Of a stretch of 64,000 bases of DNA, positions 25,271 through 48,176 are shown in pieces (positions within the stretch are counted from its first letter, which is position 1; every line of letters begins with the position of its first letter). This DNA is from Phallusia mammillata (Eukaryota). The notes under the pieces were generated by a model. It did not search any database. It was not told the origin of the DNA and was given only the letters and a program-made list of their open reading frames with translations. The stretch lies in assembly GCA_965637545.1 (NCBI GenBank), contig OZ281497.1, positions 26,970,001 to 27,034,000 of the forward strand, given 5' to 3'. The position numbers and the translations under genes are program-made.

Positions 25271-26938
25271 TCAATATCGACGGCTCCTGTGCTCGGCAGG
25301 TGAATGACTGCGTTGACTTGTACGCTTTGCAGACGAGCGACCAGTTTCGACCACAGTTGGCGATGCAGCCCTATATCTGCTTGAAGAGTATCGTCCGGCG
25401 TCTCCGTCTGCATGGCCAGCCTCCAGCCGACCTTTGTAAAAACCGTTATAACTTGAACCTGAAAGACCCAGGAAAATTTGAACGTTACAAAACTTTAGTT
25501 GGACTTTGGTAAAGAAGCAAACAATTATTCACGGAAATAACTAATATTTTTGCACAACTTGTTTTAGTTCGTTTGACAATTCAGATAATTATTATGAAGT
25601 ATAACATGTTTAGGACTAAGCTATGATTGATTTGTAACGTTTATGAGACAAAATGTCAATCAAAGTCTAAATGTTCTTCGTCATTTCAGGCCATTTCAGT
25701 AAAAAAAATGCTGAATTCTGTCAACAAATACCTGAGCGGTCAGGAGCAGCATAAGCACGACTGGAAGCAGAATCAGCGTAAGCATCTCTTGATTTGCTGG
25801 AACCAACATCATGCGATCTTCGCTGCGCATAATCAGCCTTTCTTCCTGGTGAAGACCTGCTGTAACCATCAGATCGCGAACCATATGCGCGATCTCTTCC
25901 AGGCGGTGTTGTAGCCCTTGCAGTTGCAGCAGCAGCAGCAGCATAACGACCGCTGTAATCTTCCGGGGAAGGATCCCTCATTCTGCGTCTAGCTGGAGGG
26001 GAGTAAGTTGCGTCTGCAAATTCCCTTCGATCATGATATCCCGAGCCTTCCGGCCGTCTACTACCCATAGCAGGAGGGGAATAATCCCTCGTAACCTGCT
26101 CACTTCTGTGCACTGCTGGTGGCGAGTACTCACGCCGACTTCCAACAGGCATTCTTCTGGACCTTGGTGGGCTTTCCTCCTGATAGTTGTACCTTGTAAC
26201 TGGACTTCGTGACCTTCCACGTGATGCTTCGTATCTACCATTGTATGCATCACGAACAGTTTCTGTTGCATAACCTCTTGAACCAAAGTCTTCTCTTCTG
26301 CTTTCAGTGTAACGATAACTGTCACTATTATCTGCCCTCCTGTAATCGTAACTGCTTGATCTTGTGTCAGGGTTGGCTCGATCTCCATAACCTCCACTCG
26401 ATGCACCATAACCCCGACGAGAATCTCTAGCATCGTCTCTTGGGTCATCAAAACTGGCAACACCACCACCACGAGAGTCGTAAGTACTTCTTCTTACATC
26501 ACTGTAAGAGTCACGACCACCACCGCCGCCACCACTTCTGTAACTGTCAAATGAGCTTCGGCGTCCATCGCTCCTGCCTCTACCATCATCATACCGATCG
26601 GTCCTCCCAGAAAACCTGTCACCTCCTCTACCACCGCCACGAAATCCTCCCCGGCGGGGCCGATCAGCCATAGATGATTGTTTTTCAGCTTTTCTTACAG
26701 TCACACAGCGTCCCATAATTTCAACTCCATGCATTCTGCGGATTGCATCATCGGCAGATGATTGTTCTTTAAATGAGAGAAAAGCAAACCCTCTTGATTT
26801 GTTGGTCTCTCTGTCTCGCATTACCATGACTTGGACAATGTCCCCGAACATACTGAATGACTTTTCAAGCACAATTTCATCACAGTTGTGGTCCAGACCC
26901 CCAATGAAAATCCTTCCACCGATATCATCACGGCTCAT
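25271..26938 (-). CDS. RBMX: RBMX/hnRNP G-like RNA-binding protein (N-terminal RRM plus RGG/RS/YSPP low-complexity tail), about 464 aa
   Basis: Exon 26938-25732 carries RNP2 IFIGGL, RNP1 RGFAFLSF, MRDRETNKSRG, and RDYSPP/REYSPP repeats. It splices (G|gtattt ... tttcag|GT) to exon 25458-25271, which ends HRSRRY*, similar to the RBMX C-terminal RSRY. CIRBP/RBM3 family membership is not fully excluded. Confidence 0.8.
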
Positions 26939-29399
26939 GTTTCTGATTTTGTTTTGATGTAAAACAAATAATACTATCCTGTGAGACAAAATTCTGAGTT
27001 GGACACCAAAAACACAAGTGGCATAAAACCGAATTCACACCAAAAAATATCTGACCTCCAGTAACTTAATGCTGCCAATAGCATGCGATTGCATGGTAGT
27101 TTGACTACACATTCTCTATGAAACTGTTTCTATATTTCACTGTATATGTATCCACATTTCAAATATCAAATGCATTGCAGTAATGGACATGAAACAAAAC
27201 AATAGCTTTCATTTTGACAAAGTCCCAGTAGTATAGCAGCCAAACTGTTACAAGTGAAAGGTTCAGTGCAGCACTTTTGAGACAACAAGGTGTTCTCCAG
27301 TGTGCTACGAGTGTAGGACACCCACCAACAATCGAACCTCAACATGTTCAACAAACCAAATGGCTACCATTCTTTAGAGTTTTAAGCTGCCAAAATACCA
27401 GCATTGTGGTGTTTAGTCAGTCATTTTCTTTTGTGCCATAGCTATTTTTTCGTAATGCACAGAATGCACAACTGCACAACATATGGTTTGTTGTCAAATA
27501 AACAGACAAGCATAAATAAATTATGAATTTCAAAGCAACCTTGCTAAACATATTTTTTTCTCCATGTAAGTATTGTAATGCTCTTGCAACTGTCAATTCA
27601 TCAAATTCTTGTTACACCAATGAATGAAAGGAATAGATTGGGACTATATTTATATTACTTAGTAATCACCAAATTAAACAAGGATACAACAGGACACTTG
27701 ACTCAATAACCCATATTTTTTCAGTGTCCTTATCGTTTTACACTAATGACAAATTTGATGAAGTGACAAATGCCTATAAGTTTGACTTGTTGCAGTAGAT
27801 GCACATAACCAACAAACTGATCACAAGTCGTGGAAACAAATGTTTTGTATTCTTTTAAATCTTGCTTAGCTCAAAGTGTCAACAAATACCATATAAACAG
27901 CAAACACAATCTTGACAGTCTTATATTCCTACACAGTTTCATTTAAATTAAAACTGATTTCACAGAACAAAAACTGATTCTTACGAATTTAGATTCTCTG
28001 ATTTCAAAATGTAGTCAGTTCTTTTCTATCAGGCCTAGTTTTTCTGTTACTGTGCATCTGCTTTTGTGAAAAGTTGATTGTAATAAAATTGTCCCTGGTT
28101 ATGTTTACAGAGACAATATAGTACTAATGTAACTTGTGATATGAATTTACATTTATTTTAAGATCAAGCCGTCACAAACCACTTCAGCCAATATAGGTCA
28201 AGGTACATGCAGAAAATATATTTTACATTTTGAAATATCCGATACAAATTGACTTTCATGATTTCCAACCAAAGTTAACCAACAGTAGTCAGCTTTTAAC
28301 AAAACATCTCTACATTCTGGACATCTTAGTTTGCTTTCACTGACATCTGGATGAAACAGTTTTCTTTCACTTAGTTTTTTTTACAAATCCAGTTTGCACA
28401 AATTTCACATGAACCACTTTGCTCATTTTTCATCAAAAACTTTAGTTCTTTCAAAAAGTTTCGCCCCAGCATTGAATCCATTAACTATACACTAATATAA
28501 TGGGGGGATTTTTTATTTTTGACAAGTCTGTTAAAGTGCAACTTTTGTTTTAGTGAGATTGATTCACTCTGATATTAGGAAAATAAAACTGGCAAGTAGC
28601 CACAGTTAATATACAATAGCTTTTGTGTTATTACAGTGCAAATTTATAAAATTTATGAAACACCAACTTAATCAAGATTTTAAAACACCCAACACAGACA
28701 GTCCAATGATTACTGCACTTTCAGCATCCATAAACATCTGAACAGTACATCAAGTTTAACAAGCATTTATTGTTCAGGCACAGAAAACTGGCAAATCCAT
28801 TTCTTTTTGTCTGTCCACCTAATTGACAGCTGACAATAAGTTAATAAAGATTTTGGGCAGAGAAACATTTTAGAAGATAACAAGATGCTTGCCATACAAA
28901 TTATCAATGGCTAGACTCTCGATAGTTGAAAATTGGAATGTACTAAATTTTACAACTTGAAAACACACTTGACGCTTTGTCATATATTTCTTTAGTTACA
29001 CATAGCAGCTTGTTTTTACAAATTTAGTATAGGGGACCATGTTTTGTGTAATATGTTCTCTCATAGCGAGTCTTTCTGAAGTTTCTGAACTTGTAATGTT
29101 TCTCATTTCTCAAAAATCCAAGAACAGGTTGAAATATAGTGTTAAACAATTCACCATACTACAACAAATGCTAATAAACTTAGTGTGGTAAGTGGTTTGT
29201 GTACCACATAAAATCATTTCTTTTTTACGAACTATTTCAGATTCTCAAACATTTTAATGTATTTGCTATGCAACTCACACAAATCAAACTCAGGGTTCCA
29301 CAGATTGTTGACAATCAAAGTTCACTGACATCAGGTTCAGATTCTGACAATAAAACTGAAATTAAAACCGAAAAACATCCAAAAACTGCGAACCTTTAC

Positions 29400-29445: not shown

Positions 29446-30243
29446 CGCTCACCGACTTTAAACAGTGTGAAAATATGGTCACGTGGTAACTTAGTTTTTG
29501 AAAATATTTAAGTTTTTTTGTAGATTTATTTATGAAAAAAATATTCATTTTGTAATACCAGTTTAACCGATGGTTGGTAAACGGATTTGATTTAATACAG
29601 TTTTGGATACCGGTATCATTAAAAAAAAGCGAAGTTTCTGGACTTTTATTTTATTTCATACGATAAAGTATACCGATAAATGCGTATAAATAGGCAGTGA
29701 GAAAAAACAACGCGTATATCTAGATTTAACACGCGCCCGTTGCTCAGTACCATTTGTACAAAGTTTAGTTCAGTTAAAAAAAAGTCCATCTGCCAACTTG
29801 AATACGTTATTGCATTGAAGTTACATGCTGGTTTCAGTCGTACTTTTACGACATCGAGGGGAGTACAATTCTTTTCAGTTTTGTAAATGCAACACTTGTT
29901 ATCCATTTATGTGACTTTTGTGACCTGTGTGTCGAAGAGAAGTTAATTATGCTTTTTAGTGAATTATTTGCTTTTGTACTGTGAGGAGTTTAAGATTTGT
30001 AGCTACCTTATTGCCTTGCGTTTTAATTTGTAATACTTTTTTAATTTTATTCCCTTGTTTTTTTGTTTTTTTTATCTTTTCTTCATTTTGTGAAGTCTGT
30101 ATGCATGCTGTATAATTTATTATAGTACAGTTTCCAAACAGCTAAATTACCTTGAACTTGTCGTACATCTTTATTTATTGTTTTACTTAAAGTTTTGAAG
30201 ATTATAGAATTTATATTCTTTTGGGAGTCGAGTTCTGACAATC

Positions 30244-33200
30244 ATGGATTTCCAGAATCGAGCTGGAGGCAAGACTGGTTCTGGGGGAGTTGCTTCATTT
30301 TCGGAAGCAAATCGTGACAGACGAGAGAGACTTCGTCAACTTGCACTTGAGACGATCGATTTGAACAAGGTGTGAAACTGTGAATGACATCTTTGTTTAT
30401 TAATTTAAGAGGTGTTCTGTAATTTTGAAAAGGACACGAGAATGAATAAACTGATAAAGAATTAGCATGTTTTGTTTTTCAGGATCCTTATTTTATGAAA
30501 AATCATCTTGGTTCATACGAATGTAAACTGTGTTTGACACTTCACAACAATGAGGTATGTATTACTTCATACATTTCTACCCATTTTCTTTCTTTTTTAA
30601 CCACAACATTTATTTTTATGGTGTCATAGGGTAGTTATCTTGCACACACACAAGGTAAAAAGCATCAGTCAAATTTGGCAAAGCGAGCAGCACGAGACGC
30701 CAAGGAAGCTCCAATACAGCCAGCACCAGCAAAACCTCAGGTCGAAGTCAAGAAGTTTGTTAAAATTGGGCGTCCTGGTTATAAAGGTATGAACATAATG
30801 TAAACTTGTCACTCTAAGCCACTTGCTGTAGGGCAGGTGTGGCCAACACGTCGATCGCGATCGACTGGTCGATCGTCTGCTTTTGACTGGTCGATCGCAC
30901 TAAATTCTCCATTACTAATCAAAAGCTTATCAATTGAAAAACAAATTAAATAATATAAAACAGCACTTCTGACATTTTGACACAACCCACAAATGTGCAA
31001 TGAGACAATAATAATGTAAATGTCACTCTCTTTGTTGGGTAACAATTGTGATTTTCGTTTGTCGTCACAACTTTAATGTTTGCGTTAACGAAGCAGTTGC
31101 AATTGATTGAGGAGATTTAAAAGTTTGAAAAATATGTACATATGCGACGTTTTATTGTTGCAAGAACTAGGTGATGCTTTATAATAAAACTCATGAATAT
31201 AAATATGTGGTAATTGTCAATCAAATCTCATGCAGAAATTTGCGTTATTGCTTTGTGTAAGTGGTAGCCTAAATTACTACTGATCAGTCGATCGTGTGCA
31301 ATTAAGAAAATTTTCGTCGATCTTAACGACTAACAAGTTGGCCACCCCTGCTGTAGGGGATACAGTGTTGTCGTAATTAAATTTGCCAAGCAATATTACG
31401 AAATCCAAATTCAACTTTTTTAGCTTTATATTGATATCGACAACTATTAAAACATGTCAATAAAAGTTAAATCATGTCTTTAAAAACAAAAATACATTTT
31501 TGCAAACATCATTCTGGTACTAAGACTGCTAACTGTCGCGACTGGTATAACTGGTATCATTAGTTAAATTTGTACCAATCAGATTTTTATTAACCGACCA
31601 AATGTCAATTGATTTTGTGATATATATATAAGCCAGAACAGTTTTACAAACCTATTTCATGTAGATTTAGCATCATACTCTAGCAAAATGTATTTTATAC
31701 TTTCAGTTACAAAGCAAAGAGTTCCAGACTCCGGACAACAAAGTCTTCTTTTCCAAGTGGATTATCCAGAAATAGTAGAAACCATTCAACCACGACACCG
31801 CTTCATGTCAGCTTATGAGCAGCACGTTGAGCCACCAGATCGAAAATGGCAGTATCTACTTTTTGCTGCTGAGCCATATGAAACAATTTCTTTCAAGGTA
31901 TTTTAAAACATTTTGAGATTAACACAAGAAAATTCTGTTGTAAACTATTATGTGCCTTGTAACACTGTTAATCTGTGCTGGGTTTTTGATTAGGCCTTAG
32001 ACGAAGCTTAAGCAAAAATAATTTCAGGCAGCTCACAATCTTGGTGTAGTTGTTTTTGAAGAAAATTAGACATGTGACTTTAAAATAGATAAAACACATA
32101 GCTAATTAAAAGAGGTGATCTGAAAAATTTGCAACCCTGATTTTGAACAAAAAGTCAAAACCAAAATAATACTATATATTGCTCAAACATATATATAATT
32201 GTAATTTTCTGGGTCACTGAAGTAACAGTTAAAACAATGGTTTGTAACCTCCAGTAGTTTGTGATCACCTAAAGTACTGCCTAAAACTCATAGCACCCTG
32301 CTCACCTAATAAAAATGTGCTGCATTAAAAAGGAAAAAGGGGTTGCCACTTGGGCCCAACCACTCACTTAATACTATGGAATGCCTAAGATAGTCGTCAT
32401 AACTACTTAAAGGTGTATAAGTTCACACATGTTTTTGTTATTGTTTATTGTTGGGTTTAATGACAGCACTAAGAAGTTTCCTACTTTGTTCATCGGTGCA
32501 TTGCAAAATGTTTGAAAGCATTCGTCCATTTTTCACCCTTTTACCCCACATTTATATATATTTATACATATATATGTGTTGGGTTTGGGTTGAGAAACGT
32601 AGACCTAAAAGGTTCAGATCATGGTTTGGATAAAAGCCTGCCATAATTTTTAAAGCACAAAATTGATTGGTTGAAAATTACAAGTTTGTTTTTTCAGGTG
32701 CCAAGTAGGGAGATTGACAAAGGTGAGGGAAAATTTTGGACATACTGGAACAGGGACACAAAGCAAGTAAGTTCAAAAAATTTAGCCTGTCACCAAGCAT
32801 TCACCATATGACAAGGTGTAGGCTAAAAAAATATAGCCTGTGGTGGAACTTGAACTCATGACAGGAGTCTTTGGGTAAAACATTAAACAATATCTAAAAG
32901 TAAGGAAGGGTTTTGTGTTAAACATGTATTTCTTGATCTCCCACTGCAGTTTTTCTTGCAATTTCACTACAAGATGGAACTTCGTCCTCCACCGATGACA
33001 ATCATGCCTGAGGAGCAGCAGAATCCCCAACCTCCACAAGAAGAAGAGGACACAGTACCTCTTCCACCTGGAACTCTTCCTCCTATGAACAACATGGACG
33101 ACTTCGACAATGTTGCTCCTCCTGGGATGTTCAACGACATGCCCCCATTCCAACCACCACCAGGAGGTCCTCCATCTTTCAACAACTACCGAGGTCCCCC

Positions 33201-33360
33201 ACCCCCTATGGCCCCACCACCAATGGGACCCCCACCTGGAGGCCCCCCGATGATGGGAGGAGGGGGTCAAGATGAGTTTATGGATCATGGCCCTCCACGT
33301 GGTGCCCCACCCCCTCCACCCATGGGTCCTCCCCCGGATATGGACGATCCCGAAAACTGA
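30244..33360 (+). CDS. SF3A2: Splicing factor 3A subunit 2 (SF3a66), about 341 aa, 6 coding exons
   Basis: Exons 30244-30369, 30483-30554, 30630-30786, 31707-31897, 32698-32766, 32950-33360. MDFQNRAGGKTGSGG, the U1C-type zinc finger YECKLCLTLHNNEGSYLAHTQGKKHQ, KIGRPGYKV, PRHRFMSAYEQ, WQYLLFAAEPYETI, and a Pro-rich tail. Confidence 0.97.
30834..31350. mobile_element. hAT-type MITE in an SF3A2 intron
   Basis: TIRs caggtgtggccaac / gttggccacccctg, perfect 8-bp TSD CTGTAGGG, and subterminal gtcgatc repeats. Confidence 0.9.
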
Positions 33361-34741
33361 AAAAGGAATTGCCATCTGGTTAGGCTTAAAATGCAGCCAA
33401 ATCCACCAAAGGATTTTTAAGAAAAACCTGCTACCTACTGCCCAATGTGTTGCATACAGGCAATGTGTAAGTTGTAGCATCGAAAAAAATAAACTCAGCC
33501 AAATAAAACACTGTTTTATGCATAGGGATGTTAAAAGTAGAAAACAGAACTGGGTATTCTAGAATAATCGTTTCAAATCTGGAATATCTAGTTCAATTTT
33601 TATATTATTGACTGTATTATACTTGATCTTGACAACAATAAAATCAAACCAGTTTAGAACATTCAAAATCGTATTTTGCATTTACAATACAAAAAAGAAA
33701 CTTTCAAAACACTGAGAGAGGATTGGCATATTTTACCTTGGAAAGTACACTTTCATAACTGTATTAAAATTGACATAATATACAAGTGTTTTGAAAAAAG
33801 ACTACCCACGGTCTACCGGTTAAAGCATGGGCATGCGCATGACAAATGATCGTCACGTGCTAATCGTTAGGCTTTTCGAGTCTAATCAAAATGCTAACCG
33901 CCGTCGTTAACGGTGTTAGCGCCCTCAACGAACGAAAGACCATAGTCCATGGCGCCTGAACGACTCAACTTGCTTTAAGGAACGATTGCAAGCGTAAACA
34001 TCATGCATGCGTTTTCAATCGGCCGAGAGCCAAATTCATGTCGGTTTCAACTACCCGATGAAAACGGCACATTAGTATTCGAATCATAAGGATTCGATAG
34101 TCTGCTTTGAACATCCCTATATGCTATTAAGAAAATATTCCAGCAATTGTTAGAGAAACTCTGGTTTATTTCAATAAAAAAATCAGCAAAAGTCTCAAAC
34201 AACAGTAAAAAAATCACAAAAAAATGGAACATTTATAAGCTAAAATGAGTAAAAGAAGCAAAAAAGGAAATGTGTTTACGGTACAAAACAGTTTTGTACA
34301 TGATAAAAATTAAATAAACAGGGTCACATAGTATTTAGATTGCTGAATACCGTTCTATTTGTCCAGCTAGACTTATGACAGATGTTGTGAAAGTATAAGA
34401 AACATACCATGGAACAAGTCAGTACCCGACGTTAAGACAGAAAATAGTCTCATGAACGGCAATGATCACAGTGGTAGAAATAGCATAAAAATGTGATGTT
34501 GATATTATAGGCGACGATTTTTCCCCGTTTGAAACCTTTTCTTGTCGCTCTGTGCACAAATGCATTGCACGACATGGCAGTCGTTTTTCTCACAGCCAAA
34601 TTACTTGCACTCGAGATTTATTTTAATTTTTTGTCCGAAAAGGTTTTAAATCTTTTTGATATCTCTAATCTGAAGACAATAATATTGTCTGGTAAAGGAC
34701 GTTGTAGAAACAATATTAGCAAAACAGTGAACATATTTTAT

Positions 34742-37700
34742 TCAGCCGTCCTGGCTATGACTGTGTGAGGAGACAGACTGACTTGCGCGTTGTTTTCTTC
34801 GAGATCTGAACGATTTAAATAAAGATTTGCTTCGACTTTTCCTCAAGGGATGATCCTTTTCAAACTCGTTGCCTGGCAACGCCAGAATCGCGTCATTTTT
34901 TTGTGCCTGAGGTTCGATTCGCTCTTTCGGATGTAGAAAGGATGAGAGGGACGAAAATATTACGGTTTCCAATGGTCGATGGGCTTGTTTACGTGACCTT
35001 AAAAGAGAAAAAAATTGATAAGGTTATAGTATGTGTGTTTTTTGTGCGGCTTGATTCTGCATAACGTGCCTTAAATGGATCTGGCATACTATGATTTATA
35101 TATGAGTGTGCCATGATCGCTGGTCTGCATTGATGCTTCAGGGCTGATCCCAGTTATGAATTTATGTGTTGTGGGTAGCCTACATTTGTTATTTATTCTA
35201 AAAATTGAAACTTATACCGACATACCCTATTTAATATGTAGAAAGTGTTTTGCTATATTTTCACTAAATGTGGCAACTGTACACACTACTGCTGGGTCTT
35301 GAAAACAGGGCAGTCTTCAAGACATTTACTGAAAAAGTCAAGACGCAATGCATATAATACTTTTATACCTGTCAATACAAGAAAACTTCCAGTTAAGGAT
35401 CGTCAGCCATTCTTTCTTTTCCTTCTCACTTATTGTGTACATGTAATATGTGCGGTCCGGCATTTTGATTCTGGAAACGGAAAAACTTTACTATGATCGA
35501 AAGATACCAACACGAAGGCCAAACACTAGTTTACTGCCGTCGTAAAAAGCAACGTTAAAAAGTCATGCACGTAATTATTTGCTGATATTGCAGAAATAAC
35601 ACATTATGCAAATCAAGAAAGGTACTGTGCAAAGATAATAAATACAGTATGTAAGTTATTGTTCCGAGGCATAATATTAAGTTTATAGAGCTCTTCTGGC
35701 AAATGTATTTATGCACCGACGTTTCGACGTCTTATTTACAGGTCGCCCTCATCAGGGTAAATAACACTGAATGAACAGCACAGTGCACGATAAAAAAAAA
35801 TTTCTTTGTTTCCCTGACAGAAGAGCTCTATAAACTTGATAATAAAAACATACTACTTCATAAAAAATCATTTTGCTTACCCGAACGAAAACGGTCTTCC
35901 CACTTGAGCACTTGGGTCTTCTTCTAAAGCTTTGTATGACGTCAGATCGAGCGTTCCTAGTGGCCGAAGATCGGTTGGTTCGTGATAATATTTCATTTCA
36001 TATCCACTCAATGTGAACCAGCGAATGTTCCAGGTTTTTACAGATCCTCCTTGTTTCGTCATAAAACCCTGCTTCGAGAGAACCTGTAGAAAAAGGCGAC
36101 ACCTTGTTAAATGCTGCAGCGACCCGGATAAAATAAGTTCTTTAAACTACCTAATTTTGTATTTTATTTTGTAATTTTTGTATATTATGACATGCACAAA
36201 AAAACTTCTATGCGTCACAGATAAATTATGACGTACTTACTATACGTCACACTTAAGTTAATTATTTGCAAAATTAAAATTTAGCTGTTATTTTGTAGAA
36301 AATTGATCTGTGCGCCATGAAACATTTCACTGAGATATTTTAAAAAACTTACCCCCGATTTTTCCCAGTTATCGAACAAATTATCGACATCTCGAATTGC
36401 TTGCATAGTAATTGCTCGTCGTTCGGTTTCATTTACAGAAGCTGTTACTTCTTCCATCATCTGTGACGTGATAAAGAGCACATTATTAAGCGCAAAATAA
36501 AAAAACCTTCATGTGAACACGAGTTAGGAAGGTTTAAATGCGAAAAAACAACATATAAAAACGCCATTATTTGTTTAACTGTATGTCGACACTAGGTTGC
36601 AGCAAAGTGCCATTTTGTGTTTAGAAACAAAAGAACAATAAAATTTTAACTAAGATGAACATAGATGTGCCTTGCCATGTGGGGATGCTTGGGTAAAACC
36701 TTAATTTTACATTCCAATGTTTATCTAAGTCTTTCAATCAAATCGGATAATCGGCTTTGTGACGTAAAAGAGCTATTTTCAGGATCAATAAACAACAGCC
36801 ATCAAAGGTCAAACGCAGACTAGCATTAAATGTCGTCACAACGTCATTACGCAATAAAGGAAAAGCGCTACGTCGTAAAACACAGAGCTGACTCAGGCGG
36901 AAACCCACGCTAGTGTAAAGTTCATCGATTAACGCTCTTGAACAACACGACGGGAACTTGGATTTGTCAGACGTTGACATTAACTAATGGCGTTTCTCTT
37001 TTACTCAGTGTTCTGCACCAGTTCTTCTTTACCGGGTAAATGTTTAACACATCAGGGTGAATAAAATGATTGGAATGATGAACAGACTAAAAGGGTGAAA
37101 CAAGGTTTAAGAATACTGTCGTTTACTTACGTGAAAGGGGTGAATGACATTTTGGGAATTTTCGCGTAAAAACGGTAAATGAAATTTTATGAAATTTCAG
37201 TGAAACAAGAACATTACATTGTGGAAATTTTCGCGTGAAATATGAGAATGATATTTCACGAATTCGGCGTGAAACTAATGAATGACCTTTGTGAAATGTT
37301 CATGAAACAGGTAAATAAAATTTTGGTGGCGATTCGTGAGTAAGAGTAAACAATTATAAAAAAAGCTTTACACGACATTAAGTTAATATATTTACCTTCA
37401 TGGCATTTGAGACCGGGGTATGATCGCTGTGACTTTCTGGCGTAAATTTCTTCAGTTCCCGTAAAAGTAGAGGGTATTTGCACAAACGCTGAACAGGTGA
37501 AATGATGAAACCTTCAAGGTGGAGAAATTTACGAGTTTTGCTCGCTACACTGTCTTTCCAATCCTAAAAAATAAATTAAATATATTTGTTTGTTGCATTT
37601 TTATGGTTGTTATTTGTTGCTTTTTTCCCGCTGCAAACCTGTATGTAATAGCATATACGTCTACTACAAATGCGTAAAACATGAAAACCACCAAAATTGA

Positions 37701-40700
37701 CTTCTGTTTTAATAGTTGTATTTGTACCAGTACAAACATGATACCAACTCCATCGCTTATATTCAACAGTTCTCAAGTTTAATCCGAAATATAACGGCCC
37801 AAATAGACGTCAAAAGCGACATGCTTTATTGTTCAGACGTTTCGGCAAATGCTCATGCCATCATCAGTGATATAAAGCATGTCGCCTTTACGTTTATTTA
37901 CGGGGCTGTTAAATTCTTCATTATTCTTATGAACAGATCCGTGTCTAGTGTTTCAATGGTTCTCAAATCCACAAAAACTTCTATATTAATCCAACCGTTC
38001 TATAACACATTATGTTTTTTTGTTGGAAGTTTGGAAACATTCTGTGCAGCTTCAGCGATTCGTGTAAAGTAAACTCACGGTGAAGCCAATAGTTTAATGT
38101 GAAAATTTTGACTTTAGAATAATGAAAATAACTTCTAAAACTGTACATACCTGTATCAGTGCAAGGACTGTCGGGTCGGCTTGAAGCTCGTAACTGATCC
38201 GTTGCGCGGTTTTGAAGTTGGCGCAAAACTCTCCATAAACTTTAAACTCGTCCCTCTGCAAAATACAAGTTGTTTGTCAAAATTATCAGTTCACTTATAC
38301 ATCGCTCTTATGTCCTTCATTTCTGCTTCAATGTCGATTAACCGTGTTCGTTATGTTTGTGTCCAAACTAGTTTCCAAACAGATCCAAAGGTTGCAACAG
38401 TTTAATTTGTACTTTAATATCTTAACAAATGATGTACTTATTACGTAATATTAAGTTTATGAGCCTATATGGAATCACTTTTAATCAAAAAATGGTGCAA
38501 TACACGTTATATTCACTTATACTTATCAACAAACTGTTTACTAGTTTGTCCACATAAAAAAACGCACACGCTTACTCAAACTTACGTGTTTGAGGAAAAT
38601 GTTGCCTATGCAGTTAGTATAGTAAGGGTATGGTTCCATGACGTCACGCAGAGCGGCTGAGAATCGAACGTGCAACCTGTGGATCTCTCTGATGTTGGAC
38701 AACATTTCGGGGATAGTTCGGGAGGTGACACATGCAATCTTCTCATCTTTGGCAAGTCGTTGCAGACTTGGAATAATAACCTGTTGAAGGCCACGGAACT
38801 ATTATTAGAGTGAATGCTTTGTCTTATATGTGTGGGCACAGCTTGCGCACATACGGTTGCTTGCAGTGGCCCTCAGTGTACTCAGGGAGCTTGTGTGTAT
38901 GCCCAGGTACATTAAAATATATGGTGCACATAAACTGGTGTGTGACCACAGCATGTACATCTAATGTTGCTCACAGTGGTCCATATAGCACTCAGGGCTC
39001 ATGTGTGAATGTACAGACACATCAAATTCTATGCTGCATCTCACAGAGGCCCTTTCAATACTCAGGGAACTTGTGTGTATTCCAGGACACATGAAAATCC
39101 CCGCTGGACATAAACTAGTAAGTGACCACACAGCATGCACATCTAATATTGCTCGCAGTGTTTTTAAAGAGCTTGTATGTCCATAAATGACAAACTAAAG
39201 AGAACTCTTTTAACAATAAGGCAACAGTTTCAGTATTGGATCACAACAACAGGGCTTCTGCTACACCAACAAACACTTACGTCAACGATAAACTGGAGTA
39301 ACTTGGCGTAATCTTCTTCAGTTTCGAGTATCTCCTTGAGCACATACATCCTCAACTTTTGCTCCCCAGTGAGAGCATAACCTCTTCCTCCCTCCTTCTC
39401 GCTTCCTCCGGGATCAGCTTCGTTGATCTGCATCGCTCCCTTCACTGTCTTCCTCATGGTTCTGCGAAAAAAACAAGTTATATGGTGATAAAGATTGAGA
39501 ACCACTGGACTCTTGAAACCAATGAGGGATGAGGCAATTGTTTGCTTATTAATTGTTTGGTACAAAGTTGATTAGGCCCGAAAGTTTGATTGACAGGTCT
39601 ATACATTGAAGCCTCAGGAGAGATCAAGACAACAAACACAATTGGTCTTAAACAAGGCGTTTTAGGGCTGTTTGACATGAGATCAAGTCCAGCAACTGGC
39701 TTGTGAAAAAAAAGTTATGAAAACGGTCATCCACATAACAATAGGGCTAAATTTATTAACGACAGTTCAAAACAATTTATATTTAAAATTGCGTCGGTGT
39801 TACCAGCAGGAAACGTTCATCAATATGCTTAAAAGACGTTATATATACGTTTAATTTGCCACTGTGTACATAAATATCATAAACGGGAAAACAACACCGT
39901 TATAATTAACAGGTTATATTTTGGTGATCAACATCCTGACATTTGCCTGTTTAGCATTAAAATGCAAATTAGCCTTGGTCAGGTTTCATGAAGTGAAACG
40001 TTATCTAATCTCGAACTTTTTTTGTGGCATTTTTGTACCTTTTGATCTGCGTTGCTTCGGGCATTTTAGCCTGACGTTTGGAAATCAGATCAATGCGACT
40101 TATTTTATGGTTATAAACTTCTTAAAGTTGTCGATTTATCAAAGCTAAAAAGGAAAAGGAAATTTGTTACAGCACGACCGGCGGCTGTTTATAGCAACAT
40201 TGATAGCTTACAATCAATAAACCATTTCTTAAAAACTCAGTAAGTATGAAGTATAACGGAAGTGTAACAGTTTAAAGAACATCATACATATTGTTTATGA
40301 TTTTGTATGTACATTTTACCAACGACATCCTTAAACCAACAACTAACACTTCGACTGTACAAGCGCTTGTCGCCCCCAAAAAAGCAGTTTAGAAGACATC
40401 AAGCATAAGGGAGGCTGAGTTTGTCACAAAAAACTTAAATCAAACACTATCAGCTTTAACACGACTTTCTATTTAACTCAAGAAACTGAATTCACCAGAT
40501 TACTATTTGGTACAACATTTTGCATGGCAGCATTATGCTCGTACAAAGACAGACACTAACATTCTTATCTCAACGTTCAGCCTTTGTAAAGAAAAAACAC
40601 ACACAAACCCGTCTTAACCTGCAATACTGCTGTTAAACTGAAACCACGTCTGCAGATGGTCACAAATTGTAATCAAACAGTCTCTACATCCGACTAGAAA

Positions 40701-43700: not shown

Positions 43701-46700
43701 GGTCGTACATGGCGGGGTCAATGTGTCGACTGTTAGCTTGTCATAAGCAACGAGAAATTGATTTCGCTACATCGGTTGCTATGGTGCTTTATTGAAAAGG
43801 CGTATGAAACACTGATCATGGATTTATGGCACAGTTTTGCTTTAGTCATAAAACGTATTGTCATGTTAAATTTTTGCTGCTGAAACGAGGTTTACGTATT
43901 GCAATGATATGAGTTTTGTAATACTACTTAATGGGTACGTGTCAGCATTTTTAAAAGTAATTTGTTGGTCAACAGGCTGGGAACTGTTCAGTTAAACACC
44001 AACTGAATTAGGTGGCATCTGAAAGAAAAAGCGACCAAAGGGGCTAAACAGATCAATATTACGCATTAAAGATCTCATTACCAAATCTCTGCTTCCATGC
44101 AACAGAAATTTATACCCTTTGATCTTAACGACATAAGTGGCATCTTCAAAACGCTGTTGAGGTAAGGAGGGCGCCCTGACCTTTCACACACTTCCAATAC
44201 AGCTGTAAATAAACCTCTAGTCTGATATTTTCTAACCCATAAAATGTAATGTACTGCATATATGCCCACCAGGTCCAACAAAATAAATTTACAAACAGTT
44301 GACGCAACAAATTTTCGCAATTTTAACATTTAAAACCAAATATATTAAGACTTTACTTTAAAAACATCGAAAATCTTGAATTTTACTAATCTAATTTTTC
44401 CTAAACAGCAAACCCAATATTCTGACTGATGAAACAACAGCTATAATCATGCAACTACCTTAATTAAAATTAGTCATCGCAAACGTATAAAGCATATTGC
44501 TTTCCTACGCACAGGATAAAGCCAGCTAATGCATAACAACACACGAATTATATCCGCTTCTACCACACTAACAGATAAACATGTTTTTTTTTTCCTTTCT
44601 CTTTTGCCAGACTTTACACGAGAAAGCCATTTCACCGGTTAGGCACATTTAATAATAGAGACTGCATAAATGAATTGCTGAAAAATTAACTCGCAAAATG
44701 GAAATAATTTTGGATCAATGCTTGACTTGGAAAATGTTGATTGTTAGGTGTCAAGAATGTAAGACGTTTAACACGGGGTATTCTGCTTGATGTTCAACAA
44801 TGTTCTACTCGAAAGGTAATTATGTCAACAAACAATCAACGACAATGTTATGAAAGTGCCTAAACTAGTTTCAGTTTAGCCTTTGACTGAGACAAAAGCA
44901 ATCTCCTTTGTTTCTTGTAAAACGTGAAAAAAACCTCCCGATTTCATAAAGAACGCTGTACAGTAAACCAGCTTGCTACTACGTTTAGGATGATTGTAAT
45001 AACAGCAAACTACGTACAATACACATTTTGTTGTACAATAATTCCTCGCAAACAGTTCCTTCACCACTAAATAATGCAGCTGTCAACAACATGTCTGTCG
45101 CTTTAATAACAATTCGTATCACATTTCGTTTCAGTTTCGCGAAAGGAAATATCCATCACACGCATAATCTTATAACAGACATTAACAACCCTGGGTTCGA
45201 CGTGTTTCCCCGAAATTAAAGCAATATTGCGTGCAAATACATGGAGGTTTGGCGACGGTCTCAAACCCCCAACATGCAGTTATGAGAAGTAGCAATCAAT
45301 GCAATTCCTGAGGGACCACGCGTTACGAAATCCTATAACCTGCTCGTTAAAAGCTAGTCAGTTTGCAATATACACTTCGCACATTTACACAAAGTGCAGG
45401 TATTGTACAATTTTTATAGGTAAAGACATGCTGTGAAAAGTAACTTATTTTTCTTATTATAACCAAAAATTTTTTATATTATAAACCGACATTGTTGCAT
45501 ATAATACCAAATTTAGCTAATATGCGTAAAGTTCTGCTTTTTCTCCCGATTAGCAATGGTTTTTAATTTACTAAGCTTGCGCCTTGCTAACACTTTTTTT
45601 TCTTGACTGTCTTTGCGGAACACACAAAGGTTGTTCAAAGAAATTAATTTGCAACGAATTTGTGAGATAAAAATAAAGATCTAGGGTTGTTATGCCCACC
45701 CGTGCTTTGTCACAAAGTCCAAACACATGAGATGACTCCAAAACTATAAAAATTCCGTCTTTTGTAACTAGTTACACTATCTTGCAGTAAAAAAAATGTT
45801 GCAGTAAGCCCTACAAATCACTAGACGTGTTGAAAATAATGAAATTAATTCTTGATGAAATATATCTTGTTACAATAAAGTCTCATTTTGAGTATTTAGT
45901 CGAGAGTACTTCAAAACGTTTCACTTAAAATAACTTCAACAAAGTATTTTAATCGCTTCTTTACACAACACCGCGTCAACTGCACCTCTTTGCTTAAGTG
46001 TGAAATATTGTTTCAAAACATGCATGACCTCGTTACTGTAACTGCTGGATACTACTTGCTTATTGTAAACACAAGAAGGTCGCAAAATCACAAAGACCAG
46101 CTCGAAAACTCCGTTAACAACAAACTAACATCCGCTTAACGCTAAGTGTAATCAACTTCTCTATTGAACAAGGCACAAGTGGTTGTAGCGCACTAGTGTA
46201 AGATTGTTTGACGCAAGAACGGACTGACTTGACCTTAACAATACAGCATTCCACCAAGGCCTAATTGCTCGTCTATGGAAATCAGTTAAACGGTAATTGT
46301 CCGGTTGCTGGGTCCATTGCTAACGACATAGAGTATCGATTCATTAGCCACATTGTTAATGCGTGGGAAAAGTGTATTATTGTTGTTGTTTCCATGGACG
46401 GCCTTACGTTTACTCAGTTTTTAATCTAGACGTGTTTCCTGGGTTTCTTACACGAAAAATACAGCCAATCAAAAGGCAATTTGCATTGTCACAGAAACCG
46501 TTTTATTTTCTAAAATTTCAAACATATTGTCGCATTCCTAGTACAGTATGTATAATTTTTTTCACACCAAAAGCGCAGTTTCTGGCAGTTTAATAAAACG
46601 TTTGAATCCGGCTTAATTTTTAAAATATTTTGTCATGGTACCTTCCGCGTTTCATAATTCCATGCATGACTGATTTCTTGCGTTGAATTCGATTCGCTTT

Positions 46701-48176
46701 GGCGCTGTCGGTTTCGCTTGGGTGATTACTGCCGCGGCTTGTTCCTGTGGTTGTTCTCGTTCTGAAAGAAACAAATCCTGAGTGCAATTTGGCATATATA
46801 AAAGAAAACCAGCATATTTGAACACGAAACGCTGTAATGTGTGGTTCCCAACCCGTTACATTCCTCCCTTCGCCCATTTTCGAACTATTCATTCCTTCCC
46901 ATAAGAAGAAAAACAAATATAACATAAAAAATTATAGCAATTTGAAATAGACCTTATAATTAGGGATATCCATTCAGAATCCTTTACCAAATGTGAACCG
47001 GGTCCAAATTATAATGGACATAATAATGTACACACAGAAATATTCTGTTTCCAATGTAATTTTTTTGCAGTTTTTATGAAATTCCTCCCCTGAACTCATA
47101 AAATTCCTCCCTGGGGAGGAATTCCTCCCCGGTTGGGAACCACTGCTGTAATGGAAGGTTTTAATAAAACGAACATCACAAACCATGAGATTATGCACTT
47201 ATGCTGTTTTTCTATTAAAATATTGAATCAAAACCTGTTTAAGTAAGCAAAGTATTTCATAATTAAGTTCCACAACCCCATATTATCCAATCTCATTTGT
47301 TTGTTTGTTCTTATGTATTTTGGAAAACTATGTTACAATCTATGATACAGCTTGCCTAATATCAGGTCTAAACATTGTATCAGTAACAAAAATTTATGTG
47401 CGGTGCAGACAAATCTTTTGAAAAAATTTGCACGTTACAAAACTTTGACTCGAAAGGTTTTGTGGAAATTGAAAAGGCTCATTGCTCCCACCTTGTGGTC
47501 GAATTGGTGTTTGTTCTGCCTTCGCGCTGCCGGAAGAACCACTTTGCCGATCGCATTGTTGTACTGTGGTTGCTATGTGTGCTAGACATCGATGACGAAC
47601 GGCTGTGTGACGGATTAACAACCTCAACGCGATCTGGGGACAAAACAAGAAGAATTTGTGAACGAAAACAGTGTTTATTCATCACCAGTACCGTATTGAT
47701 GCAAGTTAATGCTGGTACGATGCTTTAAACTAGATTTAAAATGGGATCAATCATATGCGTCTTTGCTAAGGTATGTATTTTCCGTGGGTTTATGATATTA
47801 CACTGCATCAACTTTATCCTTATTTCTTTCAAACAAAGATTTGTTTTAACCATATTTTTATTTTAACAAAACAAAACATGATATATTGTTACTATTTGTA
47901 AGTTTATTGAACTGACATATTGTCAGTTACGACAATGCGGGCCTGATCACACAATAAAACTCATGAACATGCCATCATGAAGAGTTCCCAAATATTGTAT
48001 TTATATCCCCAATAAGTTTTCGCGACTATAAAAAACGCTTAGGTTTCAGTCATATTATTACCCGGAACTTGCAGAGTCACCACACTCTTATATTCATTTG
48101 CTTGTGGTACGGTTTCTACTTTGACGTCATCAGCGGATAGATCCGTCACTGTTATATCCCCGTAACCGTTTTCCAT
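34742..48176 (-). CDS. Rho-family GEF with a P-Rex-like DH domain and a DAPP1-like PH domain, about 564 aa, 11 coding exons
   Basis: Exons (minus) 48176-48062, 47633-47492, 46761-46642, 39461-39281, 38780-38586, 38255-38151, 37563-37396, 36460-36353, 36083-35881, 35470-35369, 34997-34742, all phase-compatible. DH motifs: [70 protein letters not shown]. PH motifs: KQGFMTKQGGSVKTWNIRWFTL...RTYYM...EWLTILNWK. The three N-terminal exons are less certain. Confidence 0.88.
35709..35764 (-). ncRNA. Minimal type I hammerhead ribozyme motif flanked by a perfect 20-bp inverted repeat (35679-35698 / 35818-35837)
   Basis: Minus strand: TTATTTACC-CTGATGA-G-GGCG(ACCTGTAAATAAGA)CGTC-GAAA-CG-TC|GGTGCATAA. 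Stem I pairs at 8 of 9 positions, counting one G.U. Confidence 0.75.
37123..37343. repeat. GTGAAA-rich element with short terminal inverted repeats; probable MITE
   Basis: ttacttacg ... cgtgagtaa ends, with many gtgaaa/atgaaa units. Confidence 0.45.
37816..37885 (-). ncRNA. Minimal type I hammerhead ribozyme motif within a long inverted repeat (37792-37911)
   Basis: Minus strand: TCA-CTGATGA-T-GGCA(TGAGCATT)TGCC-GAAA-CG-TC|TGA. Stem I is extended by the perfect 14-bp pair gcgacatgctttat/ataaagcatgtcgc. Predicted cleavage between 37836 and 37835. Confidence 0.8.
38860..39170. repeat. Degenerate tandem repeat (units anchored on actcaggg; about 180-bp higher-order duplication)
   Basis: ctcaggg at 38881, 38990 and 39061. 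The blocks cttgtgtgtat, acataaact and cagcatg.acatctaat.ttgctc each occur twice. Confidence 0.7.
39572..39698 (+). repeat. Dispersed repeat, copy 2
   Basis: Direct alignment by eye with 18978-19108; the first 30 nt are identical. Confidence 0.85.
40790..41004. mobile_element. hAT-type MITE
   Basis: TIRs cagtagttctcaaac / gtttgagaaccactg, TSD CATTATAA, and internal gcgtcgc repeats. Confidence 0.9.
41076..41401. mobile_element. hAT-type MITE
   Basis: TIRs catgggttcccaacc / ggttgggaacccctg, TSD GTTTAATA, and internal gtggtacg repeats. Confidence 0.9.
42818..43143. mobile_element. hAT-type MITE (AGGGTTG ends)
   Basis: TIRs tagggttgccat / atgtcaaccctg, degenerate TSD gccataca/tctataca, and gtccttattt subterminal repeats. 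Confidence 0.75.
46840..47145. mobile_element. hAT-type MITE
   Basis: Ends tgtggttcccaacc / ggttgggaaccactg, TSD CTGTAATG on both sides, and attcctccc repeats. Confidence 0.85.

What the first reader, a model, noticed from the sequence alone, without database searches (positions are those of the whole stretch)
35369..39461. Chimeric Rho GEF: P-Rex-like DH domain fused to a DAPP1/Bam32-type PH domain
The DH exons resemble P-Rex1/2 (LR..VL.EIL.TE.DY; LEG...SP.QR.CKYPLLL.EL.K.TP; NET.R...WE). Right after the phase-0 intron following DNWEKSG, the expected P-Rex PH, DEP, PDZ and IP4P regions are absent. Instead the PH reads KQGFMTKQGGSVKTWNIRWFTL...LDLT...RTYYM...EWLTILNWK, close to my recollection of DAPP1 (KEGYLTKQGGLVKTWKTRWFTL...LDLT...RTFYL...EWIKILRWK), with the Kx(n)(K/R)xR-like phosphoinositide-binding signature largely retained. 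Inference: exon shuffling produced a compact, lineage-specific GEF recruited by PIP3/PI(3,4)P2.
Basis: partly seen in the sequence, partly recalled or inferred. Interest (0 to 1): 0.75.

Follow-up and report, generated by a model that had tools for sequence, protein, structure and literature searches.

The report
Sea-squirt RhoGEF with swapped PH domain
This is a real, expressed sea-squirt gene in which the catalytic half of a P-Rex-type Rho/Rac activator is joined to a lipid-sensing PH domain of the kind found in the adaptor DAPP1, and shared intron positions show the join was made by exon shuffling.

Summary
On the minus strand, five exons encode a DH (RhoGEF) domain whose best solved relatives are P-Rex1/2. 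Two exons encode a PH domain whose best solved relative is DAPP1. Spliced RNA contigs join all of these in one transcript, including the 36353-to-36083 junction. The gene is larger than reported: a terminal tail exon (34742-34997), a 5' exon (40039-40114), and probable alternative N-terminal exons near 46.7 and 47.5 kb.

Orthologues exist in Clavelina, Ciona and Styela, and a divergent paralogue with the same architecture lies elsewhere in this genome. The genome also holds a canonical P-Rex-type gene (DH, P-Rex-type PH, DEP, DEP, PDZ) and true DAPP1 genes (SH2-PH).

The window gene shares three phase-0 intron positions in its DH part with that P-Rex gene. Its DH/PH junction intron sits at the same position and phase as the intron before the PH exons of DAPP1b.

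Lipid binding and GEF activity are inferred, not tested.

This scan already reported the same kind of gene on another piece of this genome (s1-349175). Databases name these proteins automatically ("ARHGEF4-like", "P-Rex-like"). My four literature searches found no paper describing the PH swap.

The parts
40039..40114 (-). 5' exon e0 of the transcript seen in RNA. It holds an in-frame ATG at 40064-40062, with an in-frame stop upstream at 40124-40122. Its 5' end is not defined.
   Evidence: Joint 39461->40039 with GT..AG ends in RNA contigs of X1, X2 and X3. DNA read.
39281..39461 (-). Exon e1: second in-frame ATG at 39457, and the start of the DH domain (the LKEIL..TEEDY motif). It ends in phase 0 at the same position as an exon end of this genome's P-Rex-type gene.
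38586..38780 (-). Exon e2, 65 codons, DH. It is co-extensive with an exon of paralogue B.
38151..38255 (-). Exon e3, 35 codons, DH. It is co-extensive in start, end, phase and length with a 35-codon exon of paralogue B and of this genome's P-Rex-type gene.
   Evidence: No Pfam hit for this exon alone.
37396..37563 (-). Exon e4, 56 codons, the DH core (the QRLCKYPLLL motif).
   Evidence: Pfam RhoGEF E 5.8e-14; P-Rex1 is the best PDB hit.
36353..36460 (-). Exon e5, 36 codons, the end of the DH (NETERR .. NWEKSG).
36084..36352 (-). The DH/PH junction intron, phase 0, GT..AG. On its 3' side it sits at the same position and phase as the intron before the PH exons of this genome's DAPP1b.
   Evidence: skipped in X1, X2, X3.
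35881..36083 (-). Exon e6, the first two thirds of the PH domain. It ends in phase 2 inside a Gly codon, an intron shared with paralogue B.
35369..35470 (-). Exon e7, the last third of the PH domain.
34742..34997 (-). Terminal coding exon e8: a conserved 25-residue motif after the PH, a polybasic Ser/Arg/Lys tail, and the stop TGA at 34744-34742. The 3' UTR runs on to at least 34500.
   Evidence: DNA read. Joint 34997/35369 seen in all 4 runs. The tail is conserved in Clavelina, Ciona and Styela. No Pfam family.
46641..46757 (-). Probable alternative N-terminal coding exon, conserved with the N-termini of the Ciona and Styela orthologues. It would splice to e1 in the same phase. Supported by homology only.
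   Evidence: tblastn E 3.5e-5 (Ciona) and 0.007 (Styela). It lies outside the stretch laid with reads.
47494..47613 (-). Possible further N-terminal exon. Weak homology only.
   Evidence: tblastn E 0.025 (Clavelina) and 0.49 (Ciona).

Best explanation
The locus encodes a small Dbl-family guanine-nucleotide exchange factor. The protein is about 447 aa from the ATG in e0, or 437 aa from the ATG in e1, and longer N-terminal isoforms are likely. The organism is an ascidian, almost certainly Phallusia. The protein has a DH domain of the P-Rex branch. A complete PH domain of the DAPP1/Bam32 clade follows after a 3-residue linker. Then come a conserved short motif and a disordered polybasic tail.

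It is one of two ascidian paralogues (A here, B on another chromosome). Both descend from a single chimeric gene. That gene combined the 5' (DH) exons of a P-Rex-type gene with the 3' (PH) exons of a DAPP1-type gene, by recombination at the DNA level (exon shuffling). This happened before the A/B duplication and before the split of the three ascidian orders sampled.

Shown here: the gene structure, splicing and expression, the domain affinities, the conservation, and the shared introns.

Inferred mechanism: the PH domain binds PI3K products, PI(3,4,5)P3 and/or PI(3,4)P2, and, helped by the basic tail, brings the DH domain to the membrane. There the DH activates a Rac/Cdc42-type GTPase. The gene lacks the DEP-PDZ-IP4P half that autoinhibits vertebrate P-Rex.
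For: One transcript: single RNA contigs (X2, 1443 nt; X3, 1815 nt) run through e0-e8, and every intron has GT..AG ends.

DH affinity:
- Clavelina orthologue P0020 against PDB: P-Rex1 133.5 bits, P-Rex2 126.6, collybistin 94.6, Asef 89.5.
- Paralogue-B member P0035: P-Rex2 86.7, P-Rex1 76, Asef 67.
- Foldseek on an AlphaFold model of the Ciona orthologue (DH and PH pLDDT about 75-90): P-Rex1 DH/PH first.

PH affinity:
- DAPP1 52 bits against 33.6 for the next hit, and 76.4 against 39 for B.
- In a careful tree of 73 PH domains, A+B has 98/94 support, DAPP1 (16 rows) 95/94, and both together 97/90. The other rows were 45 of the best non-DAPP1, non-GEF matches from an exhaustive scan of 1.84 billion proteins.
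- A quick tree of 188 rows gave the same grouping, 97.

Gene structure:
- The e1 end, e3 start and e3 end coincide with phase-0 introns of the genome's P-Rex-type gene on C5.
- The junction intron equals the DAPP1b intron, 3 codons before the K-(E/Q)-G-F start of the PH.
- Paralogue B keeps the second DAPP1b PH intron.
- A and B share the e2 and e3 boundaries and a phase-2 intron in the PH.

A and B DH domains group together, 98/97.

The donor families are both present in this genome. The P-Rex-type gene has a P-Rex-type PH (59.5 bits to the P-Rex1 PH), two DEP domains and a PDZ. DAPP1a and DAPP1b are SH2-PH genes.

Catalytic and lipid-binding positions: the equivalents of P-Rex1 E56 and N238 are kept (alignments; their role from PMC4601503). 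The equivalent of DAPP1 R184 is kept (its role from PMC2193139).
Against: - No biochemical test of lipid binding or GEF activity exists.
- In this species, and in Ciona and Styela A, the residue two before the key Arg is Asn or Tyr. It is Lys in all DAPP1 and B rows aligned. This could weaken or change lipid binding.
The P-Rex affinity rests on PDB score ranking, Foldseek ranking and shared introns.
- The PH clade of A+B is sister to all sampled DAPP1s rather than nested among ascidian DAPP1s, so the date of the shuffle is not fixed.
- On the DH side the junction intron is 3 codons downstream of the P-Rex gene's DH/PH intron.
- Paralogue B has no intron at the DH/PH boundary.
- The runs are labelled RNA only by guess. 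Their RNA nature is inferred from the spliced joints.
Confidence: 0.8

Rival explanations
1. The chimera is older than ascidians. It arose before the tunicate-vertebrate split (or earlier) and was lost in vertebrates. It is then not a tunicate innovation.
For: In both PH trees the A+B clade is sister to a DAPP1 clade that holds vertebrate as well as ascidian DAPP1s. It is not nested inside ascidian DAPP1.
Against: All named DH-PH proteins with this PH are ascidian: Clavelina, Ciona intestinalis, C. savignyi, Styela. Among the best 150 of the exhaustive PH search, the only proteins with a DH next to such a PH were A or B members. The stems of A+B and of B are long, so fast evolution after a tunicate-stem event could give the same topology. 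Limits: single-PH proteins scoring under about 51 bits were not listed, and the two word-indexed searches are length-limited and missed known relatives.
Confidence: 0.2
2. The PH domain no longer acts as a 3-phosphoinositide sensor. It serves mainly as a structural or regulatory partner of the DH domain, or binds a protein, and the basic tail does the membrane targeting.
For: The first basic residue of the (K/R)-x-R pair is Asn in this species and Ciona A and Tyr in Styela A. The position equivalent to DAPP1 K197 is His here; mutating K197 to E abolished DAPP1's signalling effect in PMC2193139. The polybasic tail is conserved.
Against: The Lys at the end of strand 1 and the Arg equivalent to R184 are invariant in all 11 full PH rows and in the window exon. 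Paralogue B and Clavelina A keep the full K..K-x-R pattern. The PH is conserved at 63-70% between ascidian orders.
Confidence: 0.2
3. The resemblance to DAPP1 is not common descent of the exons. It is retention of, or convergence on, generic features of high-affinity PIP3-binding PH domains by the GEF's own ancestral Dbl-type PH.
For: Canonical PIP3-binding PH domains (GRP1, PEPP1, Akt and others) share the same strand-1/strand-2 motif and also appear in the hit list.
Against: There is a score gap of about 18-37 bits between DAPP1 and the next PH. A+B plus DAPP1 has 97/90 support against 45 other close PH domains. Both DAPP1b PH-associated phase-0 introns are found in A or B. The genome's own P-Rex-type gene carries a quite different, Dbl-type PH (Pfam SOS1_NGEF_PH; P-Rex1 PH 59.5 bits), to which the window PH gives no alignment.
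Confidence: 0.04
4. Two separate genes (a DH gene and a PH gene), an assembly artefact, or a decaying pseudogene.
For: None found. The runs' RNA label is only a guess.
Against: Single contigs cross all eight junctions in two runs (X2, X3), with further joints in X1 and in X5, a run of a second study. The reading frame is open through all exons with canonical splice sites. Full-length orthologues have the same order of parts in three other ascidians.
Confidence: 0.02

Closest known systems
P-Rex1 / P-Rex2 (PIP3-dependent Rac exchangers, vertebrates) and the P-Rex-type gene of this same genome (C5, about 9.4565-9.4838 Mb)
   Same: The DH domain is the closest solved relative by sequence and by fold ranking. 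The equivalents of the GEF-critical E56 and N238 are kept. Three phase-0 intron positions in the DH part are shared with the ascidian P-Rex-type gene, including a co-extensive 35-codon exon. Regulation by PI3K lipids is predicted for both.
   Different: There is no P-Rex-type PH, no DEP, PDZ or IP4P, and the protein is about 450 aa instead of about 1650 aa. The PH belongs to another PH lineage. The DH-PH linker is 3 residues. The autoinhibition by the C-terminal half described for P-Rex cannot exist here.
DAPP1 / Bam32 (SH2-PH adaptor)
   Same: The PH domain falls in one supported clade with DAPP1 PH domains. Human DAPP1 is the best PDB hit. The R184 equivalent is kept. The intron before the PH exons is at the same position and phase as in this genome's DAPP1b.
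   Different: There is no SH2 domain and no equivalent of the Tyr139 phosphorylation region. The PH sits behind a catalytic DH. The A+B PH is a sister lineage, about 44-46% identical to DAPP1 PH. The K182 equivalent is Asn in this species.
Paralogue B of the same genome (C7, about 3.545-3.549 Mb), named by NCBI 'P-Rex1 protein-like' in another ascidian; earlier scan note s1-349175
   Same: The same DH plus DAPP1-type PH architecture. DH and PH each group with A. The e2 and e3 exon boundaries and the phase-2 PH intron are shared.
   Different: B is about 375 aa, with a much more divergent DH (stem length 1.3). It has no intron at the DH/PH boundary and two other PH introns. It lacks A's conserved post-PH motif and polybasic tail. 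It has the full K..K-x-R motif.
Asef/collybistin group (ARHGEF4, ARHGEF9, SPATA13), after which NCBI names the Ciona and Styela orthologues 'ARHGEF4-like'
   Same: These are the next-best DH relatives. Fort and Blangy 2017 treat PREX as a branch of the ARHGEF4 subfamily (passages read).
   Different: There is no SH3 domain and the PH is not Asef-type. This genome has a separate Asef/collybistin-type gene at C2, about 19.786 Mb.

Membership tests
Dbl-family RhoGEF (DH-PH tandem) | DH (RhoGEF) domain | tested here: met
   Pfam RhoGEF pieces are colinear over e1, e2 and e4. Orthologue P0020 scores 137 bits over profile 1-180.
Dbl-family RhoGEF (DH-PH tandem) | PH domain directly C-terminal to the DH | tested here: met
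   PH on e6 and e7, in one transcript with the DH. The model shows a helical DH at 74-297 and a PH sandwich plus helix at 302-404 in the Ciona orthologue.
Dbl-family RhoGEF (DH-PH tandem) | Exchange-critical residues (equivalents of P-Rex1 E56 and N238) | tested here: met
   The Glu of LKEIL in e1 aligns to the Glu of LNEIL. The Asn of VNETE in e5 aligns through P0020 to the Asn of INETK. The numbering offset from chain to protein was worked out from my recollection of the P-Rex1 N-terminus. The role of the residues comes from PMC4601503.
Dbl-family RhoGEF (DH-PH tandem) | Nucleotide-exchange activity on a Rho-family GTPase | not testable with these tools
   Needs a biochemical assay.
P-Rex family | DH domain of the P-Rex branch | tested here: met
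   PDB ranking, Foldseek ranking, and three shared intron positions with the genome's P-Rex-type gene. No tree with P-Rex rows could be built.
P-Rex family | P-Rex-type (Dbl-type) PH domain | tested here: not met
   The P-Rex1 alignments stop at the end of the DH, and no P-Rex chain is among the 51 PH hits of e6. The genome's real P-Rex PH exon scores 59.5 bits to the P-Rex1 PH.
P-Rex family | Two DEP domains, two PDZ domains and an IP4P domain | tested here: not met
   Stop codon 84 codons after the PH, and the transcript ends there. Orthologues have only RhoGEF and PH. The tail has no Pfam hit.
P-Rex family | Synergistic activation by PIP3 and G-beta-gamma | not testable with these tools
   Needs biochemistry. 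PMC4601503 reports that the isolated P-Rex2 DH suffices for G-beta-gamma stimulation.
DAPP1/Bam32 family | N-terminal SH2 domain | tested here: not met
   No SH2 in any exon or orthologue. The genome's true DAPP1a has SH2 plus PH.
DAPP1/Bam32 family | PH domain of the DAPP1 clade | tested here: met
DAPP1/Bam32 family | 3-phosphoinositide pocket residues (R184; Lys at the end of strand 1; basic residue two before R184) | tested here: inconclusive
   The R184 and strand-1 Lys equivalents are kept. The residue two before is Asn here, Lys in B and in DAPP1. The role of R184 comes from PMC2193139. The roles of the other two are recalled.
DAPP1/Bam32 family | Binding of PI(3,4,5)P3 and PI(3,4)P2 | not testable with these tools
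   Needs lipid-binding assays.

The most novel reading that the evidence does not exclude
Ascidians keep a canonical, autoinhibited P-Rex. Beside it they run two stripped-down derivatives in which the P-Rex catalytic domain was re-wired, by intron-mediated exon shuffling, to a different and very high-affinity PI3K-lipid sensor taken from DAPP1. This would give a direct PI(3,4)P2/PIP3-to-Rac switch with no DEP-PDZ-IP4P brake, and perhaps still G-beta-gamma-sensitive through the DH. The event may predate the tunicate-vertebrate split, in which case vertebrates lost this class of GEF.
Probability: 0.25. Interest if true: 0.65.

Novelty: new variant of a known kind. Interest (0 to 1): 0.5.

Why it matters
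DH and PH domains of Dbl GEFs usually evolve together as a tandem (Fort and Blangy 2017; passage read). Here the PH was replaced by one from an unrelated adaptor, and both donor gene families are still present in the same genome. Intron positions mark the seam. That makes it an unusually clean, datable example of exon shuffling in a signalling enzyme.

It also offers a natural experiment on what the PH domain contributes to P-Rex-type catalysis and PI3K coupling. Embryos of this organism are easy to image.

In passing, it shows that ascidians have a canonical P-Rex-type gene. A widely cited review states that P-Rex is absent from invertebrates (PMC4601503; passage read).

Tried and rejected
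Searches and trees that fell short:
- A DH tree including P-Rex could not be built. The three word-indexed protein searches returned no P-Rex. The length window excludes 1600-aa proteins, and one search also missed collybistin and paralogue B. Its silence on non-tunicate relatives is therefore weak evidence.
- The exhaustive search ranks by summed score. Multi-PH proteins filled most of the 150 rows, and single-PH relatives under about 51 bits are unseen.
- The Atlas look-up of the DH part gave only generic RhoGEF clusters, with no P-Rex cluster among the rows shown.
- One ORF that I took for part of the IP4P region of the C5 gene gave no PDB hit. Two ORFs I took for PDZ pieces gave no PDZ hit; one had no hit and one had only weak unrelated hits above E 0.005. 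The C-terminal half of that gene is thus only partly shown.
- Pfam gave nothing for four neighbouring ORFs that I took for SF3A2 exons. One of them was then confirmed by PDB.

Ideas considered and dropped:
- The PH exons might belong to a DAPP1 gene nested on the same strand. Rejected by the RNA contigs and by finding the true DAPP1 genes elsewhere.
- The gene might be the Asef/collybistin orthologue, as NCBI's name suggests. Rejected, because a separate orthologue exists.
- Tunicate A/B might preserve the ancestral P-Rex architecture. Rejected, because a canonical P-Rex-type gene exists in the same genome.
- My recollection that DAPP1 R206 is a ligand residue was not borne out by conservation, so I dropped it.

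Limits on the literature:
- Four searches found no paper on a DAPP1-type PH in an ascidian RhoGEF.
- The supplementary tables S1 and S3 of PMC5499878, which list the tunicate RhoGEFs, are closed. They may already list these genes under PREX or ARHGEF4.

The joined spliced protein of the window was never assembled, searched, aligned or folded. Exons were used one by one, and database orthologues served as full-length stand-ins.

Full report
**What is in the window.** I read the minus strand of 33900-40460. It shows a run of exons with canonical GT..AG introns.
- e1 39281-39461, e2 38586-38780, e3 38151-38255, e4 37396-37563 and e5 36353-36460 all begin and end in phase 0.
- e6 35881-36083 ends in phase 2, and e7 35369-35470 ends in phase 2.
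- A further exon, e8 34742-34997, was not in the finding. It completes the codon, adds 84 residues and ends at TGA 34744-34742.

Pfam scanned exon by exon (7 exons) gives RhoGEF on e1, e2 and e4 at colinear profile positions. It gives nothing on e3 or e5. It gives PH on e6 and e7.

**Which DH and which PH.** Each exon was compared with all solved structures.
- The PH exon e6 hits DAPP1 at 52 bits (E 4.2e-13). The next chain, PEPP1, scores 33.6.
- The DH exon e4 hits P-Rex1 at 49.9 bits and P-Rex2 at 44, ahead of collybistin at 39.8.
- For e2, 6 of 7 hits are P-Rex1.
- e1 gives only weak hits.

**One gene, expressed.** Four runs of the same organism were laid on 34500-40400. The runs are labelled RNA only by guess and are stored as contigs.
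- One contig in X2 (1443 nt) and one in X3 (1815 nt) pass through e8, e7, e6, e5, e4, e3, e2 and e1, and then a further 5' exon at 40039 to about 40114.
- Every skipped stretch has CT..AC ends on the plus strand, which is GT..AG on the gene's strand.
- The DH-to-PH junction (36353/36083) is seen in X1, X2 and X3. X5, from a second study, has no contig there but shows three other junctions.
- Small disagreements at the e3 and e1/e2 joints in X1 and X3 come with extra letters. They look like allelic differences near the joint, not other splice forms.
- The 5' exon holds an in-frame ATG (40064-40062) after an in-frame stop. That gives about 447 aa, or 437 aa from the ATG in e1.

**Orthologues and further exons.** I ran an exhaustive profile-free search of 1.84 billion representatives with e6 (946 proteins at E up to 0.001, best 150 listed). 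Follow-up look-ups found full-length orthologues.
- Clavelina lepadiformis: P0020, 500 aa.
- Ciona intestinalis: P0151 and isoforms, named 'rho guanine nucleotide exchange factor 4-like'. One record of the same cluster is named 'P-Rex2 protein-like'.
- Styela clava: P0152, 679 aa.

tblastn of these on the window matches every exon and confirms e8: a 25-residue motif right after the PH and a polybasic tail are conserved. It also points to alternative N-terminal exons at 46641-46757 (E 3.5e-5 with Ciona) and, weakly, at 47494-47613. These were outside the stretch laid with reads. Pfam finds only RhoGEF and PH in the orthologues.

**A second paralogue.** The same searches found a second group, B (P0035, P0087, P0100, P0057, P0170). 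These proteins are about 375 aa, with a divergent DH and the same kind of PH. B includes Clavelina and Ciona savignyi proteins, and a record that NCBI names 'P-Rex1 protein-like'.
- For P0035, the best PDB hits are P-Rex2 (86.7 bits) and P-Rex1 (76) for the DH.
- For its PH, DAPP1 scores 76.4 against 39 for GRP1.
- The own genome holds B on C7 near 3.545-3.549 Mb.

**The donor families are both present in this genome.**
- A vertebrate DAPP1 PH fragment finds, as its best own-genome match, a single-ORF SH2-PH gene on C4 near 388 kb, here called DAPP1a.
- Its relatives are named DAPP1 in Clavelina, Ciona, Styela, Phallusia, lamprey and mammals (40 proteins).
- A second gene, DAPP1b, lies on C6 (L035). 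Its exon parts translate identically to the Phallusia DAPP1 record P0194. The genome is therefore almost certainly Phallusia.

Scans of the own genome with the RhoGEF and DEP families showed DH exons followed by two DEP exons on one strand of C5. Reading that locus gave the following.
- DH exons.
- A PH exon that scores 59.5 bits to the P-Rex1 PH.
- A last DH exon that scores 60.5 bits to P-Rex1.
- Pfam DEP twice, PDZ, and Dbl-type PH.

So a canonical P-Rex-type gene exists here. A review states that P-Rex is absent from invertebrates (PMC4601503; passage read). Fort and Blangy 2017 (PMC5499878; passages read) report the PREX branch missing from Ambulacraria, protostomes and Cnidaria. They do not list it among the families that tunicates lack. 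Their tunicate tables are in supplements that I could not open. A separate Asef/collybistin-type gene lies on C2.

**Trees.** PH domains were cut from all stored proteins with a local HMM.
- A quick tree of 188 rows gave A (96), A+B (96), and A+B with 35 DAPP1 rows and one unnamed row (97).
- A careful tree of 73 rows gave A+B 98/94, DAPP1 (16 rows) 95/94, and both together 97/90. The bootstrap had not fully settled.
- Three sponge-type SH2-PH rows fell outside this clade.
- A+B is sister to the DAPP1 clade and is not nested among ascidian DAPP1s.
- For the careful tree I dropped redundant DAPP1 rows and all but the 45 best other rows.
- A DH tree of 54 rows, which contains no P-Rex rows, joins A and B at 98/97.

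Both domains thus say that the DH plus PH combination arose once, before the A/B duplication.

**Gene structure, the strongest evidence.** All of the following were read from DNA.

In the DH part:
- Gene A's e1 ends, in phase 0, at the same alignment position as the first DH exon of the P-Rex-type gene.
- Gene A's e3 is a 35-codon phase-0/phase-0 exon. It is exactly co-extensive with a 35-codon exon of the P-Rex-type gene and of B.
- e2 is co-extensive with B's exon.
- The P-Rex-type gene has two further introns that A lacks. A has one (between e4 and e5) that the P-Rex-type gene lacks.

In the PH part:
- DAPP1b has a phase-0 intron three codons before the K-E-G-F start of the PH. Gene A's junction intron is phase 0 and lies three codons before K-Q-G-F.
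- DAPP1b's second PH intron is phase 0 and lies eight residues before the conserved Leu of the T-L motif. It is found at the same column and phase in B (columns checked on the alignment).
- A and B share a phase-2 intron inside a Gly codon, which DAPP1b lacks.
- B has no intron at the DH/PH boundary.
- On the DH side, A's junction lies three codons downstream of the P-Rex-type gene's DH/PH intron. A donor-site shift has to be assumed.

As a rough figure of my own: with about 15 intron pairs compared over about 100 codons and three phases, about 0.05 chance coincidences are expected. Two were seen on the PH side.

**Function (inferred).**
- The equivalents of P-Rex1 E56 and N238, whose double mutation kills GEF activity (PMC4601503), are kept.
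- That review also reports that the isolated P-Rex DH/PH activates Rac-like and some Cdc42-like GTPases but not Rho-like ones. It reports that the isolated P-Rex2 DH suffices for G-beta-gamma stimulation.
- The DAPP1 PH binds PI(3,4,5)P3 and PI(3,4)P2 and needs R184 for PI3K-dependent membrane recruitment (PMC2193139; passages read).
- In the alignment, the R184 and strand-1 Lys equivalents are kept in all rows and in the window exon. The residue two before R184 is Asn in the window and Ciona A and Tyr in Styela A. It is Lys in Clavelina A, in all B rows and in all DAPP1 rows.
- An AlphaFold2 model of the Ciona orthologue (10-row alignment; mean pLDDT 66.8; DH and PH blocks mostly 75-90; N-terminus and tail under 50) shows a helical DH, a short linker, and a complete PH sandwich with its C-terminal helix.
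- Foldseek ranks the P-Rex1 DH/PH structures first, then collybistin and Asef. The high rmsd reflects a different DH-PH angle in the model.

The most likely mechanism is PI3K-lipid-driven membrane recruitment of a Rac/Cdc42-type exchanger that lacks the inhibitory C-terminal half of P-Rex. I put about 0.6 on that mechanism and about 0.85 on the structural and evolutionary account.

**Novelty.** The proteins are in public databases under automatic names. The DH survey of Fort and Blangy probably counted them. This scan has already described the paralogue. Four literature searches found no paper on the DAPP1-type PH or on the exon-shuffling origin. I rate it a new variant of a known kind, of moderate interest.

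Noticed in passing
Own genome C5, about 9,456,000-9,483,800, minus strand (L037-L039): A canonical P-Rex-type gene in an ascidian. It has DH exons, a P-Rex-type PH (59.5 bits to the P-Rex1 PH), two DEP domains and a PDZ. A review (PMC4601503) says P-Rex is absent from invertebrates. The C-terminal (IP4P) part was not confirmed.
   Followed up: partly
Own genome C4:388,478-389,209 (L012 1501-2232, minus) and C6:5,123,000-5,131,000 (L035): Two DAPP1 genes. DAPP1a is a single uninterrupted SH2-PH ORF of 243 aa, intronless in its coding part. DAPP1b has at least six coding exons. Other ascidians also have both types.
   Followed up: partly
window 35091-35287, 35485-35878 and 37652-38045 (introns of the gene): RNA contigs of very high word depth lie on these intronic stretches: about 55-430, against 3-20 on the exons. 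Loose ends run into unrelated sequence. These are therefore copies of an abundant, transcribed repeat. Two of the stretches overlap the hammerhead-ribozyme notes s1-554142 and s1-554130 on this window.
   Followed up: no
window 30208-33357, plus strand: An SF3A2 (splicing factor 3A subunit 2) gene, convergent with the GEF gene. One exon (30630-30800) scores 86 bits to human SF3A2 in spliceosome structures. The proline-rich ORF at 32887-33357 is probably its tail.
   Followed up: partly
window 25724-27034, minus strand: A long single ORF with an RRM domain (Pfam RRM_1, E 4.8e-19) followed by an Arg/Gly/Ser/Tyr-rich tail. It looks like an intronless RNA-binding protein gene, and the local GC skew is strongly negative here.
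   Followed up: no
Own genome C2:19,786,118-19,787,864, minus strand: Exons of an Asef/collybistin/SPATA13-type RhoGEF, 49-55% identical to an insect ARHGEF9. This is the true counterpart of the family after which NCBI names the window gene's orthologues.
   Followed up: no
P0212 cluster: SH2-PH proteins about 26% identical to ascidian DAPP1 occur in a glass sponge (Vazella). Their PH falls outside the DAPP1 plus GEF clade in the trees.
   Followed up: no
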